A DNA stretch of 64,000 nucleotides. Source: Phaeosaccion multiseriatum. Taxonomy: Eukaryota > Protista > Ochrophyta, other classes. Location: NCBI GenBank assembly GCA_965112735.1, contig OZ218950.1:2976001-3040000 (forward strand), written 5' to 3'. Shown here one piece after another: positions 1,905 to 27,879 of this stretch. The notes beneath the pieces are model-generated. The model was not told the DNA's origin, did not search any database, and saw only the letters and a list, made by a program, of their open reading frames with translations. Positions within the stretch are counted from its first letter, which is position 1, and each line of letters begins with the position of its first letter. Made by a program: the position numbers and the translations under genes.

Positions 1905-2211
1905 CAGCGCCCTGCACTTGCCGATCGAAGTCGTCCACAAGATCAACAGAGTGGTCCCCCCCTCCATCGAGGGGGGGAGAGTTGATGAGTACGAAGTAGC
2001 TAGCAGAGGTGGGCATTGCTTGGGTGCCGACTGCCTCCTTAACATCTGCACATAATCCCATCATGGGTCTTCCCTCTCCTGGCACTGTCGGGATAATGCG
2101 CAGATGGTAAGTAGGCAGGCGGCACCCAAGCAATGCCCACCTCTGCTAGCTACCTGCGATCGAGGGGGGGGGTTATTGTGGACTTCTTCGATCGGCAAGC
2201 GTAGGGCGCTG
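1905..2211. ncRNA. Long imperfect hairpin, candidate miRNA/siRNA precursor 1
   Basis: 1996-2059 pairs with 2090-2153 (64 bp, first 34 perfect, 5 mismatches); outer stem ~1905-1940 pairs with ~2176-2211. Confidence 0.5.
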
Positions 2212-10335: not shown

Positions 10336-13300
10336 ATGGGGAAGAGGAGGCGATACACGTGCGCTGATACCCGTCGATTCAGTGGTGGTGGATGTGCGAC
10401 TGCTGCAACCGTGGCAGTGTGCGGCTGCGCGGCGGTTCTGCAGAATGGGGTGGGTGTTTCAGGCTTGCATGTGGGCGCCCCTCAGCCCCTCGGTGCAGCT
10501 GCTGAGCGGCACGGTTTGAGACGTGGAGGAGGGGGAGGAGGAGGGGTAGGGGGAAGAGAAGGAGGAGAAGAAAGGAGCGGAGCCAGGGAGGATGTTAGGC
10601 CCCGGGCCTTACGATCGGTACCGTCGAATGGGGCATCAGAAAGAGATGGAGCGAGGCGGACGGGGGAAGTCATGGACTGGGTCGGTGGGGCGAGGCCCCA
10701 GCAGAGGAGTATTAATAGCAGCAGCAGTAGTAGTAGTCGGAGCAGTAGTAGTGGTAGCAACCCAGGGGATGCTACAGCGGCAGGAAGCAGCGTGCCTGCG
10801 GTTGGGCGACAGGCGCGTCGGCAGCAGCAGCCCCAGCAGGGGTCGGCTTTGTTGAGGACCAGCGCACCGGAAACTGGGCCGCGGAGGTCAATAGAGACAA
10901 AAACATCACCCCACACCCCCCCCTATAGAGCCGCTGCACGTGGTGGTGCCCGTTACAGCCATGGGAACAACCAGCCCAAAGCCAGAGGAGGGAAAGGAGA
11001 GAAGCACTGGCCCACTTCCCGACAGCCCATCTTTCAGACTCTTACAAACAAGCAGTTTACGTGTATTCGCAGGATCCAGAAGCTGGGTCGAATAGGCCTG
11101 CCGAAGGCGGCGGTGAAGGTGTTCAAGAAGGCCCTCAAGAATGCGCCACACCAGTTCGGAGAGCCGCTTTGCATGGAGTTCTACCGAGCGGGGCTCAACG
11201 CTCTCGGCAAGGCTGGCGAGGTCAGGCAAGCCCTCGAGCTGCTCAGGGAGATGGAGGCCAAGGGCGATGAAGCGCTCATGCCGGACGCTTCTTGCTTCAA
11301 CTGCTGCCTTCAGGTAAGAGCGGGTGGGCTCTCTATCCTTCTTGTTGGAGTGCACATCAGACCACCAACATCTGCCTTCCTGACTCTGCGTTTTGTTCGG
11401 TAGTGCCCAGTCTGTACATCTCATGTTAACGCTCTGTCGCCCCCCCCCCTCCCCCAGGCCGCAGCACGGGGCAAGAAGCCTCAGGTGGCCATGAAGCTCA
11501 TGGAGGAGATGCGGCAGAGAGGGGGCAAGTTCGCGCCAGATGACGTCAGCTACACATTCGCTGTACAGGTAGGTCAGGCAAAACGGGCAGACAGATAGAC
11601 AGACCGACCGACCGACAGGCCAGTAGGCTAGTATTGTGTAATGAGAAGAGGCCTTTCAGCCGGGGCTGGGGCAAGCAACTACCGAGTGGATGGGCGTTTG
11701 GCTTGGCAGCTGCCCAAGCAGGCGATACACCCCAGGTCCTCTTCCAACTTGCTAGTGCTGCTTCTTTTCCCCCCATATGTCTTCCTTGGTGCAGGCGTGC
11801 TCGAGGGTAGGGCAGGTGAAGAATGCGATGGCTCTGCTCGAAACCATGAAGATGGACGACATTAGGCCAAGTACGCGCATATACACGTACGCCATTCAGG
11901 CAGCGGCCAAGGTGTGTATGTATATTATGCCAGGAGGAGGGTGGTGGGCCTCTGGTGGTGTGTAGCACCGTCTCGTTCCGGCACACACACCACAGCCGAC
12001 CCTTCCCCCTCTTCTCTTGCTTACCCCTCCTCCCCCCCCTACACCCCTTGTGAACTCAATGTTACCATAGGCGGGAGCTCCTAATATGGCTCGTACCCTG
12101 TACGGCGAGATGCGGCTGAGGGGCCTCCAACCGGACTCCTTCACCTTCTCGGCTCTGATGGAGGTGAGTGAGGGTAGCGGGTGGGGGTAGGGGAGGGGAT
12201 GAGGAGAGAGGGGAGAGGAAGGGAGATTTGTCGGACCCCTTTCCCTTTGTCTACCAACGATGATGACGCGATTGAAGTTTGAGCTGCTCGCGTGCATGCT
12301 TCGTCCTCCCGGCCGTCAACAAACCCCACTCTCCTCCTCCTCCTCCTCCTCCGCCTCCTCCACCTCCTCCTCCTCCTTCGCCGTACTTCGATCGGACCCT
12401 CCTGCGTGATGATCGCAGTCGTGTGGAAAGGCAGGATTATGGGACAGAGCGCAGTCCACCCTCACAGACATGCGCTTGATGGGCATTGCCCCATGCGCTG
12501 CGTGCATGAACGGCCTCATCCTCGCGTATTCCAACGCGGGACTGAATAAGGAGGCGGAGAAGGTGCTCGATAGCATGCTTCTGCGCCACAGGGAAGACAG
12601 ACATTCGGAGAAGGGGGGGGTGGTGGTGGTGCAGCAGCAGCAGCAGCAGGAGGAGGAGGAGGAGCAGGGGGGGGAGAAGCAGGAGCAGCGGAAGGAGGAG
12701 AAGCAGCAGGAGCCCCTCCTGCCTGTGGCGGATAGCTACACCTTCGGGAGCGTCCTTGATGCCCATGCCAAGGCCGGAGACGCGGTTTCAGCGCTGCGAG
12801 TCTTGTCCAAGATGCCGATAGAGGGGGTGCCCATCACATCGCACTGCTACACCTCTGCCATTTGCGCGTGCGGTAAGGCGGGGAGGTGGAAAGATGCTCT
12901 GCGACTGTTGGAGCACGACATGTATTATCAAAAGGCGGCACCAGAGGCGCGCTGGAAGCACACGGGCTGGGTGCAGAAACGCCAAGCAATGTGGTTGTTC
13001 GAGGTGGCAGGCGTGCCGGGCAAGAAGCAGAACACCAGAGACAGGAAGGAGCGCCGCCCTGAGGAGAAGCACCAGCAGAAGCGCTGGGGCCGAGGTGGGG
13101 GGCTTGATGCGAGCCCCTTCCATGCTGCCATGAGTGCTTGTGCCCAGGCGGGGCAGTGGGAGGAGGCGGAGAGGCTCCTACCACGCATGCGAGCGCACGG
13201 GCTGACTCCGGGCAAGCTGGCGTACAACTCGGTGCTGCATGCCATGGCGAGGGCGAGTCAGTCCAAGCCGGCGCTGGCCTTGCTGTGGGACATGGAGGAT

Positions 13301-14446
13301 ACGTTTGGCGTCACGCCCGACGTTGTGTCGTTTAGCACTGTGATGGACGCATGTGGGAGGGCGGGCAACCCCAGGGGTGCGCTGCGGCTGCTCTACTCGA
13401 TGGAGATGCGGGGCATCAAGCCAGATGAAGTGGCCTTCGGGGTGGCAGTGGCGGCATGCGCTCGCACGGGCATGTTCCGCCAGGCCGAGAAGATTATCGA
13501 GTCGATGAAGGCGGAGTACGGCATCACGCCCTCCGAGGCGGTGTACACGGCAGCCATGCACGCATGTGCCCGAAGAGGCAACTGGCGAAGGGCCGTCTTG
13601 CTGCTGGAGCGCATGCAGACAGACCACGGAGGGCAGAGGAGCGAGACCTCCACGCGGGCCTTTGCCGCAGCTATCCACGCCTGTGGTGTGGCGGGCAACC
13701 CCAGCGCTGCGAGAGACGTGCTAAACCTCATGGCAGAGGCGGGTGTGGAGCCTGATGTGTACTGCCTCAATGCGGCCATCCATGCATGCGCAGTGGCAGG
13801 CGAGCCCACTCGATGCCTGCAGATTTTGTCGTCCATGCGCGAGCCCACCGTGGTGAGCTACAACACAGCCTTGGATGGGCTGGCGCGCGCGGGCCAGGCG
13901 CATGTCGCGACCGAATTGCTCGACAAGTTAGAGAGGACTGCGGGGCTCGTGGCCACGGAGATTACCTTCCTCACGGTACTCAAGGCCTGCTCTCGGTACC
14001 GATTCTCGAGAAGCATTGGCAGCTGGAGGTACCATGGCACAGGCTCAGAGGCGGATTTGGAGTCGAGGCAGCAGCAGGGACATGAGAGCCAACGCTGGGA
14101 TGGCGACCATCACAATGGGCCGGTGTGGGAGATTGTGGAGACTACCCTCGACGAGATGCGCAAGCGGGGCCACCCCGTCGGCACTGTGGCGCTTGGGTAT
14201 GCCGTGCAGGCTGCTCAGCAAGCGTGCGGGGACGGGGGAGGGGAGCCGGCGGCCAAGGCACTAGGCAGACTAAAGCTGCTCCAGAGAGAGGTGGAGGAGA
14301 GAGAGTTACAGGCGAAGCTTGCCACGGATCGCAAGGAGACGGAGTGGAACATTAAGCAGTTGCAGCTCAAGGAAGAGAAGAACAAGAGGAAGATGCTATT
14401 GCTCGCGAGGGAGAGGAGGGAGGCCGGGGAAGGCCCCCTCAGGTAG
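10336..14446 (+). CDS. Pentatricopeptide repeat (PPR) protein; exons 10336-11313, 11458-11568, 11795-11911, 12071-12163, 12419-14446
   Basis: Many ~35-aa PPR units (PDVVSFSTVMDACGRAG, PTVVSYNTALDGLARAG); phase-0 GT-AG introns restore the frame. Confidence 0.92.
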
Positions 14447-16803: not shown

Positions 16804-17599
16804 GCCTGCTGTCCATCGCGGCGTTTGTGCGGTTTTGGTATGTACATTACATCCTTAAGTGCCATCCCTTGATTCTTCGCGTGTTGGTGATACTTCGTGG
16901 ATCTTTTCTTTCCCCACTGCTGTGCAGCTGGAGCACCTGCATATTTCAGGCCGGGGAGCTGGTCCTGGCGGGCAGTGAAGGGGAACAAGCCTCCTCGGGT
17001 AAGAGGGGCTCAGGCTGGGCAGTGAACAACTTCTCGGAGGAGGGCCAAGCCCGGCACCAGCGGCAGCGGCGGCAGTGCTGCTCACAAAGGGAACTTCTAT
17101 ATATACCAGCACTAACAGTGTGAGCAGGTTTATTTGTGTCAGTGTGTCTGGGATGAATTGTGTGAGTGGAGTGTGTGAGTGAGTGAGTGTGTGTGTGTGT
17201 GAGTGAGTGAGTGAGTGAGTGAGTGAGTGCGTGAGAGTCACGAGAAATAGAGGAGTGTTAGGTGCAGTGAAAGGGTAGGTGCAGGTCGGAGTGTGGCAAG
17301 AGAGCTAAAGAGAGGAGAGCTTGTGAGAATGTGAGGAGAAGGAGGGGAGAAACTCTACTAGGAAGAGGCTTTCGGCCCAGGCAAGTGGCCGCGATGGAGG
17401 AAGAAAGGTAAAGAGGAGAGCGAGAACGACACACACGCAAAGAGAGAGAAAGAAGCAAGAGGAGGGAAAGGAGAGAAGGTGAGACGTGTCGGGACGCAAT
17501 CGCAAGTCAGGGGGTGCAAGGTCGCGTGCCCGCAGGGAGAGGATCGTTGACATACCTACATACCTCAGGCAGGGTCCCTGCTTCAAATGCGAGGGCTGT

Positions 17600-17691
17600 T
17601 CAACCCCTGATACACTATCCGCTATCCGCTATCGCCGGCGCGCTATCCGCTACGCTATCGAGAATGTGGGCGATAGTGTATCAGGGGTTGA
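17600..17691. mobile_element. MITE-like element A (20-bp perfect TIR TCAACCCCTGATACACTATC; TSD GGCTGT)
   Basis: TIRs 17600-17619 and 17672-17691; GGCTGT at 17594-17599 and 17692-17697; internal GCTATC repeats. Confidence 0.8.
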
Positions 17692-17703
17692 GGCTGTGTG
17701 TGT

Positions 17704-17827
17704 TCGGCCCCTGACACGCTTCTGAGACAGGCCAGCCCAGAAGCAGAAGCAGGAAGCAGGCCGGCTGGCGCCGGCCAGAAGCAAAAAAAGCAGGAAGCAG
17801 GGTCGCCTCAGAAGCATGTCAGGGGCC

Positions 17828-17829
<2 letters not shown>
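17704..17829. mobile_element. MITE-like element B (TIR TCGGCCCCTGACAYGCTTCTGAG; flanked by GTGTGT)
   Basis: 23-bp TIR with 1 mismatch; GTGTGT on both sides (within TG repeat); internal GAAGC repeats. Confidence 0.8.
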
Positions 17830-17869
<40 letters not shown>

Positions 17870-17870
<1 letters not shown>

Positions 17871-18817
17871 CGGCTCCAGACTGGACTATAAACCTATACT
17901 CTAGGCCGGCCAGTTTTTCTCCCTAGGCCGGCGGTTCTTGGCCTAACCCCTGGGTCACCTGACACTGGGGTATGCTCATAAGGTGGGGTGAGTCCATTGG
18001 GCTAACTCGCAGGACAACCAAGCAAAAAAAAAATATTATTACTACTACCCCCTCCTACGCGCACTCGGGGCATGTCCATGATCTCTCGGTCTTTCTCCAA
18101 CCTTAAGCAACGAACGTGGTACTTCTTCCGCACGTGTCCTCATTGCGGCAGAGGATGATGGTCCCGGGCTTATCATTGTCGTTGCATACAGCACAGAAGG
18201 TTTCCTTGCCGTCCTTGTTCAGAAGCTTTTGCTTCGCCTCATGCACCACCGTCGGCCTCACCGGCTGGTTGTAGTTCTGCTTCCCTCGCCTCCGACGTCT
18301 GGAGCTGACTTCCTTCGCTCCATCGTCGCTGCTCTCGTCCTCGCTGCTATCCACCATCCCTACTTCAAGAAGCGCTTCCCCTTGAATCCGCTCCTTCTCC
18401 GCTACGTTGACGAGGGTGCGGCACGTCGTACTGCTCCTGCGAAAGCAATGCTAAAGCCCTCCATCGTTGTACTCGTTGCGCCCCCAGTGGCATGTCGAAT
18501 CGAACTCCATCCCCATACAAGGCCTGGAAACTGACTCTCGGAGGTAAATTCAACCCTGTACCTGACGTCACCATCAGGAGGGGCAGCGTCAGTGTTGGTC
18601 TCACTCTCCACAGGACCATTGTACCGGCATTTGGGCCTTGGCGGCTTGATGAGCTTGCTGCCTCGCTTGCCCGCCCCCTTTCCTTGCCGCTTCTCCTCGA
18701 CAGCATGCTCCCCGGGGGGGCGGCGCCAAAAATAGGGCTAGGCCGGGGGCCTGCAGCCCCCCTAGCCCGGCCGAATTTCGTCTCTAGGCCTAGGTTTATA
18801 GTCCAGTCTAGAGCCGA
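17870..18817. mobile_element. ~950-bp TIR element carrying a frameshifted PHD-finger coding fragment
   Basis: 27-bp TIR TCGGCTCYAGACTGGACTATAAACCTA with 1 mismatch; subterminal CTAGGCC repeats at both ends; no TSD seen. Confidence 0.75.
18055..18611 (-). pseudogene. Decayed PHD-finger protein fragment inside the TIR element
   Basis: CAVC..IILCRNEDTCG / KYHVRCL / WTCPECA* = C4HC3 ligands spread over three frames. Confidence 0.7.
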
Positions 18818-19041
18818 ATTGACCTCACGAGGGTGCACAACCATCGTAAATTCCAGGCAGCAGCCAACATTTGATCTCACAAGGCTACACAACCAGCATA
18901 GCGTCACCTCCAACGCGAAGCTTTGTTGTGCGTGGACGAGCATTCAATACTACGGTGCAGGACCGTTCGCAGCTCGTTTGGATGAGTTGATGCACTCCCT
19001 CTCCAGCATGAACGGAGAGTTTGATGTGGTGGACACAACCA

Positions 19042-22000
19042 TCAGTCGCGTCGATGTCCACAGCGCCGGCAAGTGAGCCAATCCCAGGCCCGATACATGG
19101 CAGTGACGCCCTTGTTGAGGGCGCCGCCCACGGCCTGCTCCCATTGCGGGACGAGCGAGTCTCCGTTGCCCGAGCCGCGGCCGCGCCTTTGCCGTAGTAC
19201 CATGCCCATAAAGTTCTGCTTCAAAAAGTGTGAACTTAGCTCCAGCGCGGAGAACACAAAAACCTTTTCGCGGATTGGATCGACGATGGACGACACGGGA
19301 CACCCAACACATACACAGAGGGAACGGCAGAGGCAGTACGAAGCACAAAGAAGAGTGGGGGTGAATGAGACCTTTGTGCCAACGTGCCTTTCTTCCCCTT
19401 CCCACTGCCTTCTCCCGTATCGCATCTCGCCTCTCCCCTCCCGCCTCTCCCCTCCCCCCTCGTCTCTCCTCTCCTCCCCTTCCTCACCAGAGTGTAGACT
19501 ATGAACCTCAGAGATTGAGAGAGTTCGCAACTCTGTGAGTCCTCGTCCAGATTATAAAAGTAGTACTTCTCACAGGCCGGACGGGTGCACTCATTGGTGC
19601 TCAGGTCGTAGGACTGCATGCCCACACAGACCACCTGCCAGGGACACAAAACCAGTGAATGAAATGAATCATGGAGCGCATGTTAGTGGACTAGCAGTGC
19701 AACGCAAAAGTTCAAAGCAGACAGTCACAAAGAAACAAACAACGAGCCCACTCCACACTGGCAAACACAGCCGTATAGAGCCTTTTCACAGAAGCCTTCT
19801 CTCGTTGGACCAACCAAACCCACCGGTGCAGCACAGCTCGCCTCCGCGGATGCTTGGCTCTGTGCGTCTGTCTCCTTGTTGGCAAAGCCCACTCGCGGTG
19901 TGTCCCAATCGAGCACCGTGTAGAGGGAGCGTAGCGCCATACTACCGAGCACGATCCGCGGTCGGATGGGCTCGTAGCGGAACAGGGGGAGCGCACGGCT
20001 CGGGGTGTCGGGATAGATCTGCAGAGAGGAAGAGTGAGTAGTGCGCCCACAATAATCACGCAAAGGGGGGCATGATCGTGAGGAGGAGGAGGAGGTTGCA
20101 GGGGCAAGTCGTTAGTACATCAGGTGGAAGAATGGAAAAAGGCAAAAGAGTGGCGTTCGGACGACCCACAGCCCTAGACACACACGCCAATGGGAAAAAC
20201 ATCGACAGATCGACCAGAGCCAAAATAGAGGACGTGAGGACGTAGAGAGGGCACAGCATCCTTGTGTTCTCTTACCGATAAGCCGCGGCGTAAGCACAGC
20301 GCAAAATTTCCGTTCTCATCCGTCTCATTGGTCCGCAGTAAGGCGCCCAAGGGGACCTTGAGAGGCTCACCGGTGCGGCTCACTCCGAAGGTCAACCACG
20401 GAAGGTCTGCTGCACTCAGGCCGGAGTTCACCTGAGGAGGAGGAGGAGGAGGAGGAGGAGGAGGGGAGGGAGGAGGATGAATTGCGAGGATTGAAGATAC
20501 GTGCGGCGGGCGGGCCAAAGAGAGAGGCAAGGATGGCCAAACATACACGTGAACATGCCCTTCCTACCCACCCATTGAGGAAAGAGACAAAACCCGACTG
20601 ACATATCATGGGAGATCAACCCTATGCCACACTTGGGCCGTGCCAGCCACAAGGCAATCCGCACGCCCCTCTCTCCCCCTCCTGCACGCTCTGTTCCCAT
20701 GGGTATGGCACGGTATGACGTACATAGCATGTCGTTTGCCCCGCCTCGTCCACAGGACAAGGTCGATTGACGGGTGCCCAGGAGGTGAGGGCATCGAACA
20801 TCTCCTCGGGGAGGGTGATACATGCGGCACCGGTGTTCACCTCGGCAGGCCACACCACCGTCACGTTTGCGAAAAGGTCCACGCCACACAGGCTGAGATC
20901 ATAGAGGCTGGAGAGGAGGAAAGGGGGAGGAAGAGCACAAGAGAGGGGCAAGCGGAGAGGAGGAGGAGGGTGAAAGAATAGGGGAGAAGAAGGGCAGGGG
21001 GGGGTTGCAAGGTGCAGAGTCCCAGAGGGTCGGGAGGAGCGGTAAGTGGTAGAGCATTGGTGACAGTGAGGGCGACAGATGAAGCACGCACGTGGTCCTT
21101 GCCTCTCTGTCCCCTCCCCCCTCTCTTTTCTCTCGGACCACCCCTCCTGCTGCTGGGTCAAAGCCAAAGCCATACGCGAGTGTTGTACTGTGTTCCTTTC
21201 GTCCATCCATACCTGAAGGAGTGTCTGTACGAGGTGGTGGGATGCGCATCTTCGCCCCACTGCAGAGTGTCACTATACGCGGCATCTACCCCCCCAAGGG
21301 CGAGAGAGGAGGAGGAGGACGAGTCTTCTGCATTCAGGTCTAGGGCAACCCACTGGTGACAAGCAAAGAGAGCGAGTGAGAGTGGGACAAGATTAGAGAG
21401 TAGCGAGTGCGTGGGGGGGAGAATAAGAGGAATACTTGGTGTTTTTTGCCTCGTGTGGTAAGGGACCTTCCAATCACATCATCTTCTTCGTCAGCACACC
21501 AACAACAGCATGTGGAGCAGTCCTCGAGGCAGCGTGTGGGTTCGTGCGCGCGTGCGTGTGTGTGTATATGTGCGTGCGGCCGTCTCACCCGTTGGTCCGG
21601 CGGGGCCACGGACAGAAGCATTTCGTAGAACGCCGTGTCGCTGCCGACCTGACCGAAGCAGGTGGTGGTACGGGCCAGCCCCAGGATACCACCAGCCCGC
21701 TCGTATCCGTAGTGCAGCTCCTCGGAGGCGTCGCTCACGTTGAAGGTACCCAAGATGCCCGCGATGGAAACGTTTGTGCTGCGGTTTGTCGCACCCGGCA
21801 GGCTGACCTAGTTGATTCAAAAGGTATTGATGGGAGTAGGTCATGAATTGGTAAGGTAGGAGCGGAAGTGGGGGCTTATTGGAGGCAGGGATGAGTATCA
21901 GGGGGGGTTGGAGCTTCTCGGGTTTTCGTTTCGGGGCGAAGGGGTAGATACAGGAGAGGGGGGGGGGGGGCTGCCTTCCCTCATGCCTTCAGCCACTTAC

Positions 22001-22782
22001 CGTTTCTTCATACACGTGGGAGGAGTGGTAGGGGCCGTCCTCCGCAGTACTACCGAACTCGATCACCATACCTGGGATGGCGTCTAGCGGCGACTGCTCA
22101 GCTTCGAATGCAGATGTGCCCAGATCGTTGACAGCACTGTGTGGAATTCCTCCGCAGAAGAAGCGCTGTGTGGCGGAGCGGAAGAGTGTCGGCACCAGCA
22201 GCGGCACGAGGAGGAGCAACAGCAAATGCTTGTAAGGGCGGCAAGGAGAGAGAGAGAGAGAAAGACGAAGACATGGACTTGCCTCGCAATCAAGACCACC
22301 CTCTCCTCCAGCCAACCCACCTCACCAGACTCTGTCGAGTCATTTGCCTCAAAGCAAGTCGTGCCACTGACGACCCAGCTTGGTTGCGTCGCATTGCAAT
22401 CCCGCACGGCAATGTAGCCTGTCCCCGTATCCACCAGCATGTCCGTCATGCGTTGCACCCCCCGACCGACCAGCGTGCTGGTATTCGTCGTGCTGTTCAC
22501 CACCAGCTGCTGCTCTGACCCCACGTCCAGGCTGGCTGTGTACTGGAACCCAAGGTTGCTAAGCGGAATTATGAGGGTGGGGGCCTGGGATGCGTACACG
22601 CTGTTGCGTCTGTCGTCTCTTTGCCGAACCGAACCGAGTGCAAGCAACCCTATGAGCGGGCTGGCCGGCCATCTGCGTCCCCGCCGCCTCTTCCTCCGCT
22701 GCCGCAGCCGCTGCTGCTGACGCTCAGATCTCTGCTGCTCATGGCCGCAAGAGCAGCAGTGGGCGCCGCTGTGGCTCTTCAT
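19042..22782 (-). CDS. Pepsin-like (A1) aspartic protease-fold membrane protein; second catalytic motif reads NTG
   Basis: YTASLDVG..LVDTGTG, GILGLA, LYDLSLCG, VNTGAACITLP, IVLGSMALRSLYTVLDWDTPRVGFA, then a Cys-rich linker and hydrophobic C-terminal segment. Confidence 0.8.
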
Positions 22783-23137
22783 TCCTTGTATTGTCGGGCA
22801 GGGCAGGGGAACGGGGGGCAAGAAAGGGGATTGGGAGTTTGAGTTTCAGAGAGATCGCCGGTTTAAGTTTCAGATCGCCCGTTCTTTGAAACGCTGCATG
22901 TACAGCATAGTAGCGCCATCTTTATACCCACCACCGCTGCCTACTAAAGAAGGTGAATGATCTTGCTTGTCCTTCAGAAGGTGAAATACCTAGGATTTGC
23001 TGAAGAGGCTTGGCCCTGGCGTAGACGGCATCGGGGCGTCGTTTAAGAGAATTCAGGGGGTCGTCACTGCAATAAGCAACAAACAAAAGACGACCTAAAG
23101 ACGACGTGTGGCAAAGGCATTACTCCGTGTGGCAAGC

Positions 23138-24205
23138 ATGGGCGGAAAGGTTGGGAGATGGACGAGGGAGGTGAGTTGGAGCTTCGTCAACAGAGGATGA
23201 GGAGGGTATGAGTCGGTGGCGCATGGTTGGACGTTGGGGTGGAAGGTCTTCTTTAAGATTCGGGAGGTTTGTCCTGGTCAAAGGAGAAGAGAAGTTAGAG
23301 CTTCATAGCAGGGACGAGATGCCGCGTGGGCTGAGACGGATTGCTTTGTCTCATGCATGTGCCCGCCTGCTTATTGCGCCCGCTTGTGATGGTGCTTTGT
23401 CTCATCACGTTTTTTTGTGCCCTCTCGTCATGATGATTGCCTGCAGGAGCACGAGGCCTTTCTGCAGGGGCTTCGAATGTATGGGAGGGAATGGAAGCGC
23501 GTTTCGCAGCAGGTGAAGACGCGGAGCTCTGCGCAGATCAGATCGCATGCTCAAAAGCACTTTGCGAAGAACGGAGCAGTCGGAGAAAAAAAATCAGGGG
23601 GAGGAGCGGCTTGCCGCTCGGGCCCTGCATCCAGATACCCTAAGCTTTTGCAGAAGAAGAAGCAGCCACAGCAGCAGCAGTATGGCCCGCCGCTACCGCA
23701 GCAGCCTTCGCAAGAGTATGGCAGCGGGAGATGGGTGGGTGCATCGATCGACCACCTCAAGGAGAGGTGGGATCTGCTCAACATTTCCAACGAGCGCGGA
23801 AACGCAGCTCACCATCCTCCTCCCCCAAGGCTACAGCAGGCCTATGCTTGTGCATCCCCCCCCCCCAATAAGAGTGGGAACAGCTTGAGCTTGCTGTGGA
23901 ACGCCTCCCGCGCGGCGGGCGCGATGGTAGATGTCTCTACTGCTGCTACTGCTGGTGATAGTGGTGCCGCGAGCCACACATACGTGTCTGATGCGACGGG
24001 GAGCTGCAGCGAGAGTGACTCAGCGAGTACTTGCTCAACACGGAGGCTGCCGCATACCGCAAGTTTGAGCGATCTTGCCGAGAGCGAGATCATCGCTCTG
24101 CAGGCCTTGACGGGCTCGAGTGACCGACCGACGCTGAAGGGCTACTCCCCCAAGGCGGAGGCGGGAGGGGAGGGAGCAAGCGAAGCAGCGACTTGTGGGG
24201 CATGA
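23138..24205 (+). CDS. SHAQKYF-class Myb transcription factor; exons 23138-23170, 23447-24205
   Basis: Spliced GRWTRE/EHEAFLQGLRMYGREWKRVSQQVKTRSSAQIRSHAQKHF. Confidence 0.9.
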
Positions 24206-24656
24206 AAGGAATGATCTATGGCTGTATAGGGGGGGAAGGGTGAGAACAGTAGTGTTTAAGAACTGTGAAGATCTGAGAGCTGGGGGAGTAGGGGTAGGTG
24301 GAAGGGGTGGAATTGATGATGGGGAGAGGCTCCAGCTTGATCGACAACATGAAACTTGTACATACAGCAAGGAACGGGAACACTTAATTAAATAGACCGA
24401 CCGATAGTATTCACAGTAAGAGAGTTGGTGGAGAGAGAAGGAAGTGTAGACTAAAGCTCCGCCGCCGTAAGAGCTGGCGCGGAACAAGAAAGTGCACACA
24501 AACACACACGAAAAAGTGGGTTAAATTATACATTATATTTACATACCGAACAGTTCCCCGGTGGCCCTCCCCTCCCCTCTTCTTCTCTCTTCGCTAAGGA
24601 TCGAGTCTTCTTCCTCCATTTGCGTGTGACGAGACTATCATGCTAACATGCCATTA

Positions 24657-26853
24657 TTACCTGTCCGCCTGAGCTGGGCCTTCTACAAGGGCGATGGCGT
24701 GCTGCATGTGAGGGTCCTCCCACAAAACGCCACCAGCCCCTCCCCTCCTTCATCTTCCCTCCCCATTACACGGCACCACCCCCCGCCACACGGCACCACC
24801 CCCTGCCGGCACCTCCCTCCTACGCCACAGTCCGCTCTCGCGGCTCGGTCCAATGGCAGCTTGACCCGCCAGTCAGAAGGGGAGGCGCTACGAGACAGAA
24901 CAGATGCCCTCATCAGAAGGGGCCTGCGCCTGCCTCGAAGAGCTTCTCCATAATGCCGCTCCCTTGCTTGAGAAGGATAGGCAGAGCGGCCGCCGTCGTT
25001 GCGAGCATCGTCCGCTTCTGCTCGGTCGTATAGCCAGATTGGCTACCCACGACCGTCATGTATTTCTCCTACAATACGAGTTCCGAGCAGAGGCAGAGAA
25101 AGGACGAGGTGAGAGACACAAAGGCAGGGCAGGAGGACAAGTCATTGAGCAGGAGGATGGTGGGCACCCACGACCGAAAGGCAGGAGGGGGGGACATACG
25201 CCCAACCTTCTGAAAAGCGATACGATACATGAGTGGGAGGTCGCCTGCTCTGCAGAGTGAGCTATGCCAGCCCCACACAAGCCCTTTGCGGTGACCGCAG
25301 ATGCACACTCACAATGATGCCTCGCTTCTTCGGCGCCATGGCCTTGGTCATTAGCTCTGCCTCTTCTGTCGAAGAGATGGTCGCCCAGCTGCAAACACGC
25401 ACACACAAGACGAGCACAAACCCGAGAAGAGTCTCCGTGAGCGACAAGACACAACCAGTGCGAGAGGGAGAGGGGCGGGGGGACTGTACACTCTCGGACA
25501 CACATATGGCGGAACCAAACAAACAAAAAGCACTTTTTAAAGTGCAAGCGCAGGCCCGACCGGGTCCATCCCCCCATCCATCCAAACAAGGAGCGCGCAG
25601 ACAGAAAAAGATACACAACGAAACAAAACCGCCATTCTAACCGCACAGAATACCCTACCGGTGGAGCTTCTCCTCGAGCAGCTTGGTAGATGGATTGCTC
25701 CCGTTTAACCGAAGGTTCTCCACCCTACCCAGCAGGCCCAAATAGACTTGGCACACAGGCACACCGTTGACCCCTAGAGCTCTCTTCATGGCGCGGGTGG
25801 CGAAACGGTCAGACACATCCACCTCGTAAAATGACACCCCAGTGGGATACGCCTGTCGCAGCCGCTTCAGAGGCCCCTTCAGCAGCTTGCAGCTGCGGCA
25901 CCAGCTGGGGAAGGAGGGTGGGACGGTGGGACGGTGGGAGGGAGGGAGAGATGGGAGGGTAGGACGGGGGAAGGGAGGGAGGGAGAGTGAGTGAGTGAGT
26001 GCGTGATTGAGTGAGGGAGGAAGGGACGCGATGAATGAAAGTGGGACAAGCAATGAGGCAGGGAGCCAGATACCACCAAGGCCCACGCCCGAACTGAGAC
26101 TCATGCGTGCCTCGGGCGTGACCCACTCTCGTACCTGGCCGTGAATGTGGTGACCATGATGGTGTTTCCTACTCCCCGCTCGTGATTGTCCGCGTGCCTC
26201 CGCACCAGCGCGTTGTACTGCTCCACCGAGGTTATCACCTCTGCCTCCTTCAATTCACCCTTCGTCATCTCAGCCTTAATTGAGCTTCTAACTTTCCTTG
26301 GTGTGGTGGCACTCGCGGTGGCACTGGGGATTGTCACTGGGGGTGGCGGGGGGCACTGGAACTTCGAGGGCACGACAGAAGTTTCCACTCGAAGAGGGAT
26401 TTGCTCCCCACCCTTGCTGCTACCATCAGCCCATGGCTTTGGAAATACACCGCTCGCGAAGCTCGGCGTGGAAACTCGAAGAGCACTACTGCTACTCTTC
26501 CTGCTTCTCTTCCCACCCTTGCTGCTACCATCGCCCCACGACTTCAGGAAAACACCGCTGGCGAAGCTCGGGACGGCGGAAAGGGCTTCAGAGCTGCTGC
26601 TGCTGCCGCTGGTGCTGGTGCTGCTGCCGCTCGTGGCCACGGGCGGCGGCGGCGGGCACCGGAATTTTGAGGCCGCTCCAAGAGCGCTACTGCTCCTCTC
26701 TCCAGTCCAGGGCACTTGACATCCGCTTGGCGAAAACGCTAGGCTCCTCCTGAGGCAGAGGAGGAGCGCCGCCGACAACCCAATTCGCCACTCAGGCCTC
26801 TGTCTCGTCCTGCTTCTCCTACTTCCCCTCACGGTGTCCACTTCGTCCGGCAT
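24657..26853 (-). CDS. Putative plastid-targeted atypical thioredoxin (WCRSC) with C-terminal extension
   Basis: Hydrophobic signal ending SLA-FSP; spliced FTA./WCRSCK..FYEVDV..GVNGVPVCQVY; further in-frame exons to stop at 24657. Confidence 0.75.
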
Positions 26854-27200
26854 CTCACCCCTCTATTTGCTTAAAATCTTCTTCCTCCTCTCCTCGCTGC
26901 TCGTAACTAATAAAAGGGTGTTCAAGTGAAAGAAAAATGCGTCAGTTTTCGTTTCAGTGGTGTGGTGTTTATAAAAAAAAAAATAGAGCACCGACTTTTT
27001 TCTTCTTCTTGAGGAAGGCCCGCCTCCGCTGCCGACGGCGGCCAAACGGGTCGATAGCACGTGAGGCAGGGGTTGCTTGAATAGGGGACCATGCCCGAGG
27101 CGCCCTCAGAGACGCGGGCGGGGGCAATACTACTCTACTACCCCACCAAACAACCCTGTGGTCTGCAAATCCAAGCCCCGGGGCGGGGGCACTACTACCA

Positions 27201-27398
27201 TCGGCCCCTGACAAGGTTCTGAGGCGACCCAGGCCAGAACCTGGAACCTGGCCGGAACCTGGCCCGCTGGCGAGGCTTGGCAGAGCAGCCTTGGCCTTCA
27301 TCATTGCCTTAATACATGGCTTTCCCCCAGAACCTGGAACCTGGCCGGCGGGCGCCGGTCAAAACCTGGAACCTGGTTCCCCCTCAGTCAGGGGCCGA
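27201..27398. mobile_element. MITE-like element C (TIR TCGGCCCCTGAC; TSD CTACCA)
   Basis: 12-bp perfect TIR; CTACCA at 27195-27200 and 27399-27404; internal AACCTGG repeats. Confidence 0.85.
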
Positions 27399-27726
27399 CT
27401 ACCACAACATCGAACCATACCCTCTTCCTCACGCTGGTAGTTTGCAAGCCCCGAACCCCTCCCTCTCTCCCTCTCTCCCTCCCTCCCTCCCTCCCTATTC
27501 GCCCTACGCTGGAGGTTGGTAAGCCCCCCTGCCCGGTCCTCAGTCCCCTCGCTCGCCAACCCATCCAGCACCCCGGTCTCTCATATGACACACACAGAAG
27601 TTTCGGAAGAAACGACTAAGGACGCATCTGTTCTTCACCTCGTGTACCCTCCGTGGGTAGGTGGTGCGTGCTTTTGCCAGACCTCGTCCCTTCTCTTGCT
27701 CCCCTGCTCTGACTCTGGCACCCGAG

Positions 27727-27879
27727 TCGACCGCTGCCGTGCTACCAACACATTCTTCGGTAACATACTTCTAGGCCCTGGGCCGCCGGCGGTAGCAGGG
27801 AGCAAGCCGGCTGACACAGGCGGTAGCAGGTAGCAGGCCTGCTGACGCCGGTGGTAGTGGGTAGCACGTCAGGGGTCAA
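27727..27879. mobile_element. Degenerate MITE-like element D (TIR TYGACCSCTGMCGTGCTACC)
   Basis: 20-bp TIR with 3 mismatches; internal GGTAGC repeats; no TSD retained. Confidence 0.6.

What the first reader, a model, noticed from the sequence alone, without database searches (positions are those of the whole stretch)
17594..27879. TIR-element family with 6-bp TSDs and a swappable hexamer shared between TIR and interior
Seen: four small elements share a 14-nt outer TIR, TC/T-RR-CCCCTGA-NNN, followed by a hexamer at positions 15-20 that differs per element. A (17600) has ACTATC, B (17704) GCTTCT, C (27201) GGTTCT, D (27727) GCTACC. Each interior reiterates its own motif (GCTATC, GAAGC, GAACC, GGTAGC). 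B and C share the same skeleton with every AAGCAGG changed to AACCTGG (CCCAGAA..GGCCGGC.GGCGCCGG.CA..). A and C have perfect non-repetitive 6-bp TSDs. Knowledge: 6-bp TSDs with TC..GA termini do not fit the usual hAT, Mariner, PIF, MuDR, CACTA or Sola signatures. Inference: a possibly undescribed DNA-transposon group with a conserved cleavage end and rapidly re-programmed transposase-binding sites, giving subfamilies with orthogonal specificity.
Basis: partly seen in the sequence, partly recalled or inferred. Interest (0 to 1): 0.82.

Follow-up and report, generated by a model that had tools for sequence, protein, structure and literature searches.

The report
Mini-transposons with switched internal docking motifs
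Four small non-coding jumping-DNA copies in this alga share one end sequence and a 6-base insertion footprint, but each repeats its own 7-base motif inside, probably as docking sites for the enzyme that moves them; the layout is familiar, and only the end and footprint combination is unusual.

Summary
A (17600-17691), B (17704-17829) and C (27201-27398) are intact miniature TIR elements with TCRRCCCCTGA ends. A and C have perfect, non-repetitive 6-bp target duplications. D (27727-27879) is a decayed copy without one.

Public reads show the family is highly repeated. Other copies break away exactly at A's two ends, and most of them end in TCGA.

Each element reiterates a private 7-mer that also forms the inner part of its TIR (GATAGCG, GAAGCAG, GAACCTG, GGTAGCA). 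The own-versus-other count matrix is diagonal. B and C differ mainly by the same two-letter change in every aligned repeat.

I read these as MITE subfamilies with a constant cleavage end and subfamily-specific binding arrays. This architecture has been shown experimentally for Emigrant/Lemi1 and is known for CACTA and hAT elements. The 6-bp duplication with TC..GA ends failed the tests for P, Dada, IS3EU/GingerRoot and hAT.

No transposase lies in the window. A fifth element, E (17870-18817), has similar ends and a broken PHD-like remnant. This fits earlier scan notes of a P-like, PHD-ending transposon with TCGA ends and 6-bp duplications, but I could not test that link.

The scan has found this same pattern before on other DNA of this genome. 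"Orthogonal specificity" remains untested.

The parts
17594..17599 (.). left copy of the 6-bp target duplication of A (GGCTGT)
   Evidence: the right copy is at 17692-17697
17600..17691 (.). element A: a 92-bp MITE with a perfect 20-nt TIR (TCAACCCCTGATACACTATC). CGCTATC heptamers run at 17615-17652 around one GCCGGC
   Evidence: Read contigs of other copies diverge exactly at 17600 and 17691 with discordant flanks
17692..17697 (.). right copy of the target duplication of A (GGCTGT)
17704..17829 (.). element B: a 126-bp MITE with a 23-nt TIR (1 mismatch). It has seven [GA]AAGCA repeats, all direct in the sense of the right TIR, around a GCCGGC..GCCGGC palindrome. The flanks are GTGTGT within (GT)n
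   Evidence: The A-B junction is spanned by read contigs from three runs of one sample, X2-X4 (table 8)
17870..18817 (-). element E: a 948-bp non-autonomous element with a 27-nt TIR (TCGGCTCCAGAC..., 1 mismatch) and CTAGGCC subterminal motifs at both ends. No TSD is visible (GTGTGT versus ATTGAC). It is a related but separate family
   Evidence: The left end 17878-17945 is high-copy in reads and the interior is low-copy
18060..18450 (-). open frame inside E that ends in a broken PHD-like finger: C-x2-C-x11-C-x5-C, then a stop, then W-x-C-P-x-C
   Evidence: Pfam PHD scored only E=0.098. The word search and the exhaustive search found no relatives
27195..27200 (.). left copy of the target duplication of C (CTACCA); the right copy is at 27399-27404
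27201..27398 (.). element C: a 198-bp MITE with the same ends as B. It has seven [GA]AACCT repeats in three arrays (about 27237-27262, 27330-27350 and 27362-27382), an exact internal 22-nt duplication, and a 75-nt unrelated centre. The right TIR lacks the inner heptamer
27727..27879 (.). element D: a 153-bp decayed copy with a 20-nt TIR (3 mismatches) and no TSD. GGTAGCA doublets sit in a 31-nt module repeated 2.7 times (27784-27866)

Best explanation
A-D are non-autonomous cut-and-paste DNA transposons (MITEs). They belong to one abundant group in this algal genome.

Shown:
- They have terminal inverted repeats and carry no gene.
- A and C have a 6-bp target duplication.
- The genome holds very many copies, whose flanks diverge exactly at the element ends.
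- Each element carries a private heptamer that forms the inner TIR (positions 15-21). The same heptamer is reiterated 4-7 times inside as direct repeats, mostly as doublets beside GCCGGC-type palindromes. In B, C and D the doublets lie 31-32 nt apart.

Inferred:
- A transposase supplied in trans cuts at the conserved outer 11-14 nt (TCGRCCCCTGAYR) and makes 6-nt staggered cuts in the target.
- Its sequence-specific DNA-binding part docks cooperatively on the inner-TIR heptamer and the internal arrays. Lemi1 does this on Emigrant, and the Hermes BED domains do it on subterminal repeats.
- The four heptamers are a stepwise series, one or two letters apart. They mark MITE lineages descended from different master or autonomous lineages.
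- The likeliest partner is the P-like, PHD-ending transposon with TCGA ends and a 6-bp duplication that earlier scan notes describe elsewhere in this genome. In this window only element E, with TCGG ends and a PHD-like remnant, points that way.
For: - Ends and TSDs. A generic TIR+TSD scan finds only A, B and C against 0.2 hits in shuffles.
- Mobility and abundance: summed contig depth rises from about 76-121 in the flanks to 12,000-207,000 over A and 2,000-84,000 over B. Loose ends sit at exactly 17600 and 17691 with low flank agreement (0.42-0.51). Other copies end in TCGA.
- Motif correlation: the count matrix is diagonal and period-7 arrays are present in all four elements.
- Concerted switch between B and C: 8 of 12 substitutions are the same two-site change.
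- Regular doublet spacing: 7,24,7,24,7 in D, with 25-nt gaps in B and C.
- Shared sequence beyond the terminus: A and D share CACATTCT.CG.TA next to one TIR.
- Precedent for binding of reiterated inner-TIR halves: PMC1636448. The Hermes abstract is PMC10368747.
- Precedent for several transposon subfamilies each with its own MITEs in one genome: PMC1562414.
- Element E and its PHD-like remnant.
- Leads only: earlier notes s1-350129, s1-352604 and s1-352635.
Against: - No transposase is present in the window. No autonomous copy could be fetched, so neither binding nor the partner's identity is tested.
- All interior repeats are direct and partly contiguous with one TIR. Slippage would produce the same pattern.
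- C's right end lacks the inner-TIR heptamer, yet C has a perfect TSD. Read consensus suggests other copies share this end. So the heptamer may not be needed at both ends.
- Read fragments hint at further variants (GGAACCC, GGAACCA, GAAACAG). That looks more like a continuum than discrete classes.
- D has no TSD, and B's TSD is uninformative.
- No empty-site allele was seen in the four runs laid.
- The sample is only four elements.
Confidence: 0.6

Rival explanations
1. The elements are MITEs, but the heptamer arrays are neutral by-products. On this reading the inner TIR sequence was copied inward by replication slippage, small segmental duplications or abortive gap repair. Each lineage's arrays then simply inherit the founder's TIR variant, and the arrays play no part in transposase binding.
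For: - The arrays are direct tandem repeats of period 7, and in A they abut the TIR.
- C contains an exact internal 22-nt duplication, and D is a 31-nt module repeated 2.7 times. Duplication inside these elements is therefore ongoing.
- Among other copies, reads show variable repeat numbers and indels in the arrays (tables 4 and 5c).
- C's right end works, or once worked, without the inner heptamer.
Against: - B and C keep the same array layout around the same palindrome while every repeat carries the same two-letter change. De novo slippage would not be expected to rebuild the same skeleton.
- Doublets recur at a regular 31-32 nt.
- The same design occurs in four lineages, and a related design occurs in E.
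- Reiterated inner-TIR halves are bound by the transposase in Emigrant (PMC1636448).
Confidence: 0.25
2. The elements are moved by a transposase other than the P-like propeller/PHD enzyme. Candidates are an integrase-like IS3EU/GingerRoot-type enzyme or a Dada-type enzyme, both of which make 6-bp duplications, or a still unseen family.
For: - A 6-bp TSD is the rule for IS3EU/GingerRoot and occurs in Dada (PMC10045372; PMC3706591).
- Described P elements and their MITEs make 8-bp TSDs (PMC1562414).
- The link to the P-like element rests on unchecked notes and on a weak PHD-like remnant (Pfam E=0.098).
Against: - IS3EU/GingerRoot ends are TA..TA or TG..CA, not TC..GA.
- Dada has no TIRs and inserts in small-RNA genes. 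Here the TIRs are 20-27 nt, the target sites vary, and there are no tRNA or Rfam genes.
- Several earlier notes independently report TCGA ends and 6-bp TSDs on the P-like element.
Confidence: 0.15
3. These are not mobile elements. On this reading they are host palindromic or regulatory repeats, or structured-RNA genes, that merely look like TIR elements.
For: - All fold into strong hairpins as single strands (z = -3.5 to -6.7).
- They cluster in two intergenic spots.
Against: - A and C have perfect 6-bp flank duplications of unrelated sequence.
- There are hundreds of contigs whose unrelated flanks begin exactly at the element ends.
- No Rfam match scored below E=0.7.
Confidence: 0.02

Closest known systems
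Emigrant MITE / Lemi1 (pogo-like) of Arabidopsis (PMC1636448)
   Same: It is a small non-coding TIR element in which the inner half of the TIR is reiterated as subterminal repeats, contiguous and in the same sense at one end. In Emigrant these repeats and the TIR are footprinted and bound cooperatively by the transposase. This is the best experimental model for how A-D probably work.
   Different: Emigrant belongs to Tc1/mariner-pogo, with a TA target and different ends. It shows no series of subfamilies with switched motifs behind a constant terminus. No binding is shown here.
CACTA (En/Spm) and hAT (Ac/Ds, Hermes) elements
   Same: These have a terminus conserved across the superfamily plus family-specific short subterminal repeats that bind the element's protein. 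This rests on established knowledge, and PMC1636448 cites it as reviewed. The Hermes BED domains bind subterminal repeats asymmetrically (PMC10368747 abstract).
   Different: CACTA elements have CACTA ends and a 3-bp TSD, and hAT elements have an 8-bp TSD. Here the ends are TCGRCCCCTGA, the TSD is 6 bp, and the arrays are nearly all direct heptamer doublets.
P elements and P-derived MITEs (Drosophila, Anopheles; PMC1562414)
   Same: They use cut-and-paste transposition and have TIRs of tens of nt. Several subfamilies coexist in one genome, each with its own MITE families. Earlier scan notes assign the likely partner to a distant P-like lineage.
   Different: Described P elements and P-MITEs make 8-bp TSDs and have 27-31-bp TIRs. 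Here the TSD is 6 bp and the TIRs are 20-27 nt. The partner transposase was not seen here.
Dada and IS3EU/GingerRoot superfamilies
   Same: Both make 6-bp (Dada 6-7-bp) target duplications.
   Different: Dada has no TIRs and targets snRNA/tRNA genes (PMC3706591). IS3EU/GingerRoot ends are TA..TA or TG..CA (PMC10045372). Neither matches A-D.

Membership tests
MITE (non-autonomous class II TIR element) | terminal inverted repeats on a short element with no coding capacity | tested here: met
   TIRs are 20-23 nt in A and B, 12+ nt in C, and 20 nt with 3 mismatches in D. The elements are 92-198 bp
MITE (non-autonomous class II TIR element) | target site duplication of fixed length | tested here: met
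   A and C have perfect 6-bp duplications of unrelated sequence. B is uninformative and D has none. The shuffle control gave 0.2 hits
MITE (non-autonomous class II TIR element) | many copies at different sites | tested here: met
   Depth is 100- to 2000-fold above the flanks, and discordant flanks begin exactly at 17600 and 17691
MITE (non-autonomous class II TIR element) | autonomous partner sharing the ends | not testable with these tools
   There is no transposase in the window. The genome is absent from the protein collections. Only unchecked notes are available
P superfamily | 8-bp (7-8-bp) target duplication | tested here: not met
   The TSD is 6 bp in A and C. P elements and P-MITEs make 8 bp (PMC1562414)
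P superfamily | P-type transposase encoded by the autonomous copy | not testable with these tools
   No autonomous copy was reachable. The E remnant found no relatives
Dada | no TIRs; insertion into snRNA or tRNA genes | tested here: not met
   TIRs are present. No tRNA was found and no Rfam family matched. The target sites differ. The criteria come from PMC3706591
IS3EU / GingerRoot | TA..TA (or TG..CA) termini with a 6-bp TSD | tested here: not met
   The TSD length fits, but the termini are TC..GA. The criteria come from PMC10045372
hAT | 8-bp TSD | tested here: not met
   The TSD is 6 bp. The criterion comes from established knowledge
CACTA | CACTA termini and a 3-bp TSD | tested here: not met
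   The termini are TCRRCCCCTGA and the TSD is 6 bp. Only the architecture, a constant end plus family-specific subterminal repeats, is alike

The most novel reading that the evidence does not exclude
The heptamer series may mark a set of coexisting transposase lineages within an undescribed P-related superfamily that has a 6-bp TSD and TCGA ends. In that case the DNA-binding domains would have diverged stepwise together with their docking motif while the cleavage end stayed fixed. This would be a natural lock-and-key series of mutually non-cross-mobilising transposon/MITE pairs in one genome.
Probability: 0.25. Interest if true: 0.7.

Novelty: new variant of a known kind. Interest (0 to 1): 0.45.

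Why it matters
If the heptamers are docking sites, and each subfamily has a matching transposase variant, this genome offers a compact natural series for studying two questions. The first is how a transposase's DNA-binding specificity and its sites co-evolve one letter at a time. The second is how MITE subfamilies escape or keep cross-mobilisation.

The end and TSD combination also helps define a DNA-transposon lineage that current superfamily signatures do not cover.

As it stands, this window adds four or five more copies to a pattern the scan has already met several times in this genome. The architecture itself is a familiar one.

Tried and rejected
1. Pattern scans for paired ends in public collections. 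The viral contigs gave 15 hits, all chance matches inside phage genes. The metagenome contigs gave 3 hits, all long palindromes in high-GC bacterial contigs without the element's features. Neither scan yielded relatives.

2. Looking for a transposase in the window. Pfam was run on 128 ORFs of 125 aa or more, plus the ORFs around and inside the elements. It found only PPR, MaoC, thioredoxin, NAD-binding, Myb and Fer2 domains.

3. Using E's PHD-like remnant as a seed. The word search gave 0 hits and the exhaustive search of 1.84 billion representatives gave 0 hits.

4. Sampling other loci of the genome through paralogues of the window's PPR protein. The best hits were only 27-35% identical (Ectocarpus, Hapterophycus, dinoflagellates). 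The genome is therefore not in the protein collection, and the look-up of encoding contigs could not reach it.

5. Looking for empty-site alleles. No read contig skips A or B. Contigs from both samples carry the A insertion. Contigs from three runs of one sample span the A-B junction.

6. The findings look-up by sequence with E came back blank.

7. Rfam and tRNA scans found nothing relevant.

8. Paper searches for a P-like or NHL transposase in algae, and for brown-alga MITEs, found no description of this family.
Full report
**What is there**

The window is GC-rich (about 58%), intron-bearing eukaryotic DNA. Earlier scan notes call the organism an alga. The best protein matches of a PPR gene in the window are brown algae, at only 27-29% identity.

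At the stated coordinates the four elements exist as described. TYRRCCCCTGA occurs seven times against 0.6 expected, and all seven are the ends of A-D.

| Element | Coordinates | Length | TIR | Flanks |
|---|---|---|---|---|
| A | 17600-17691 | 92 bp | perfect 20 nt | GGCTGT both sides |
| B | 17704-17829 | 126 bp | 23 nt, 1 mismatch | GTGTGT, inside (GT)n |
| C | 27201-27398 | 198 bp | 12 nt, then lacks the heptamer at the right end | CTACCA both sides |
| D | 27727-27879 | 153 bp | 20 nt, 3 mismatches | none (CCCGAG versus ACACCG) |

The right end of C lacks exactly the 7-nt inner-TIR motif.

I also ran a blind scan of the whole window for any TIR of 14 nt or more with a perfect 6-bp flank repeat. 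It returns only A, B and C, plus two overlapping hits in a long palindrome near 2003-2146. Twenty dinucleotide shuffles gave 0.2 hits on average.

**Are they mobile and repeated?**

I laid the contigs of four public runs of the same organism (two samples) on 17300-18300.

- The flanks have a depth of 76-121.
- Summed depth is 12,000-207,000 over the left part of A and 2,000-84,000 over B.
- Between 114 and 1,470 contigs per run lie on this one kilobase.
- Contigs of other copies leave the reference exactly at 17600 (leftwards) and 17691 (rightwards). Their flanks disagree with each other (agreement 0.42-0.51), so these are the true ends and the 6-bp repeats lie outside the element.
- Loose ends three bases inside each terminus read CGA. 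Most other copies therefore end in TCGA, whereas A has TCAA and B and C have TCGG.
- Contigs from both samples carry A at this site. Contigs from three runs of one sample span the A-B junction. No contig skips an element, so no empty site was seen.

The tool warns that depth is not a copy number. I therefore say only that the family has on the order of hundreds or more copies.

**The motif observation**

The repeated unit is really a heptamer:

- A: GATAGCG (read on the minus strand)
- B: GAAGCAG
- C: GAACCTG
- D: GGTAGCA

Tandem Repeats Finder reports period-7 arrays in all four elements, and a 31-nt module repeated 2.7 times in D.

Counting the core pentamers in every element gives a diagonal matrix (given strand plus opposite strand): GATAG 5+1 in A, GAAGC 6+1 in B, GAACC 6+2 in C and GTAGC 4+1 in D. 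Every other cell is zero except one. In A, B and D the single opposite-strand copy lies in the other TIR. C has two, one of them in its left TIR. So the interior copies are nearly all direct repeats in the sense of one end.

The heptamers come mostly as doublets beside GCCGGC-type palindromes. The doublets recur every 31-32 nt in B, C and D.

B aligns with the right half of C. In that block, 8 of 12 substitutions are the same two-site change (AAGCAGG to AACCTGG) in four aligned repeats. The same change distinguishes their inner TIRs.

A and D also share sequence next to one TIR (CACATTCT.CG.TA). They differ by GATAG versus GGTAG.

Ordered A, D, B, C, the four motifs are one or two letters apart.

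**A fifth element**

Directly after B and a (GT)20 run lies E (17870-18817, 948 bp). It has a 27-nt TIR beginning TCGGCTCCAGAC (1 mismatch), and CTAGGCC motifs repeated near both ends. No TSD is visible. Its left end is high-copy in the reads and its interior is low-copy.

On the minus strand it holds an open frame ending in a broken PHD-like finger, with four cysteines in PHD-like spacing, a stop, and then W-x-C-P-x-C. Pfam gives PHD only E=0.098.

E is probably an internally deleted copy of a gene-bearing element. That fits earlier notes of an 8.4-kb P-like transposon that ends in a PHD finger and has TCGA ends, a 6-bp duplication and direct subterminal arrays (s1-350129, s1-352604, s1-352635). 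Those notes are unchecked leads, and I could not test the link:

- The window has no transposase domain.
- The remnant finds nothing in the word search or in the exhaustive search.
- The genome is not in the protein collections.
- Pattern scans of viral and metagenome contigs gave only chance hits and bacterial palindromes.

**How it most likely works**

Shown: these are short TIR elements that inserted with a 6-bp duplication and are very numerous.

Inferred:
- A DDE-type transposase supplied in trans recognises and cuts the conserved outer 11-14 nt, and joins the ends to 6-nt staggered cuts in the target.
- Its sequence-specific domain docks on the inner-TIR heptamer and cooperatively on the internal doublets.

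The regular spacing, the conserved layout with every repeat switched between B and C, and the recurrence of the design in four lineages all favour function over accident.

The experimental model is Emigrant/Lemi1. There the transposase footprints the TIR together with repeats that coincide with the inner half of the TIR, contiguous and in the same sense at one end (PMC1636448). That paper also cites subterminal binding repeats in Sleeping Beauty, pogo, CACTA and hAT elements. Hermes binds its subterminal repeats through several BED domains (PMC10368747 abstract).

The main rival is that the arrays are neutral products of slippage and small duplications seeded from the TIR.

For this rival:
- The repeats are direct and tandem.
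- C carries an exact internal 22-nt duplication.
- Repeat number varies among copies.
- C's right end lacks the heptamer although C has a perfect TSD.

Against it, slippage would have to rebuild the same skeleton after the motif changed.

I put the binding-array reading at about 0.6 and the neutral reading at about 0.25.

**Comparison with known families**

Membership tests:
- Described P elements and their MITEs make 8-bp duplications with 27-31-bp TIRs (PMC1562414). The TSD criterion is not met.
- Dada makes 6-7-bp duplications but has no TIRs and inserts into snRNA/tRNA genes (PMC3706591). This is not met: no tRNA or Rfam gene is present here.
- IS3EU/GingerRoot make 6-bp duplications but end in TA..TA or TG..CA (PMC10045372). 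This is not met.
- hAT (8 bp) and CACTA (CACTA ends, 3 bp) fail on established criteria.

Whether the group is undescribed depends on the partner enzyme, which I did not see.

The idea of a constant cleavage end with family-specific binding repeats is itself the textbook layout of CACTA and hAT elements. Several subfamilies each with their own MITEs in one genome is also known for P elements in Anopheles. "Orthogonal specificity" is untested. Read fragments hint at further motif variants (GGAACCC, GGAACCA, GAAACAG), which might mean a continuum rather than discrete classes.

**Verdict**

This is a real and neat example of MITE subfamilies with a switched reiterated motif behind a shared terminus, in a lineage with an unusual 6-bp/TC..GA signature. 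It is a new variant of a known kind.

The scan has already met the same pattern on other DNA of this genome (s1-360317, s1-365198, s1-357314, s1-352776, s1-342317, s1-336391, s1-357405). This window adds copies rather than a new phenomenon.

Noticed in passing
window 17870-18817: Element E is a 948-bp TIR element with TCGG...CCGA ends, CTAGGCC subterminal motifs, and a broken PHD-like finger on the minus strand. It is probably a deletion derivative of a gene-bearing transposon. Its flanks (GTGTGT / ATTGAC) show no target duplication, which I cannot explain.
   Followed up: partly
window 17594-18817 and 27201-27879: The insertions are clustered. A, B and E lie within 1.2 kb, with A and B only 12 bp apart. 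C and D are 329 bp apart. C lies about 350 bp upstream of the ATG at 26853 of a minus-strand ORF that continues into a thioredoxin-like exon.
   Followed up: partly
ends of A, B, C and E: Positions 3-4 of the terminus vary between elements (TCAA, TCGG, and TCGA in other copies). Both ends of any one element carry the same variant. Compared with a canonical copy seen in the reads, A shows three CpG-type changes mirrored at both ends. Some process seems to keep the two ends of a copy identical.
   Followed up: partly
window 27386-27398: The right TIR of C lacks exactly the 7-nt inner-TIR heptamer, although C has a perfect TSD. A read consensus (loose end at 17780) suggests other copies share this shortened end.
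   Followed up: no
window 27234-27255 and 27327-27348: C contains an exact 22-nt internal duplication. It also has a 75-nt centre unrelated to B, and read fragments show this centre joined to GAAGCAG-type arrays in other copies.
   Followed up: no
window 17979-18172: Read contigs show a second version of E's interior at about half depth, with about nine substitutions and several small indels. This is either a second haplotype or a second copy.
   Followed up: no
window 1996-2153 and 2237-2364: There are two long, near-perfect inverted repeats with 64-nt and 58-nt arms. Other first-stage notes have already flagged them. They have no TC..GA ends and are not part of this family.
   Followed up: no
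window 10336-14446: Two adjacent plus-strand ORFs carry PPR repeats. The best database relatives are brown-algal proteins at only 27-29% identity, so the genome has no close relative in the protein collection.
   Followed up: partly
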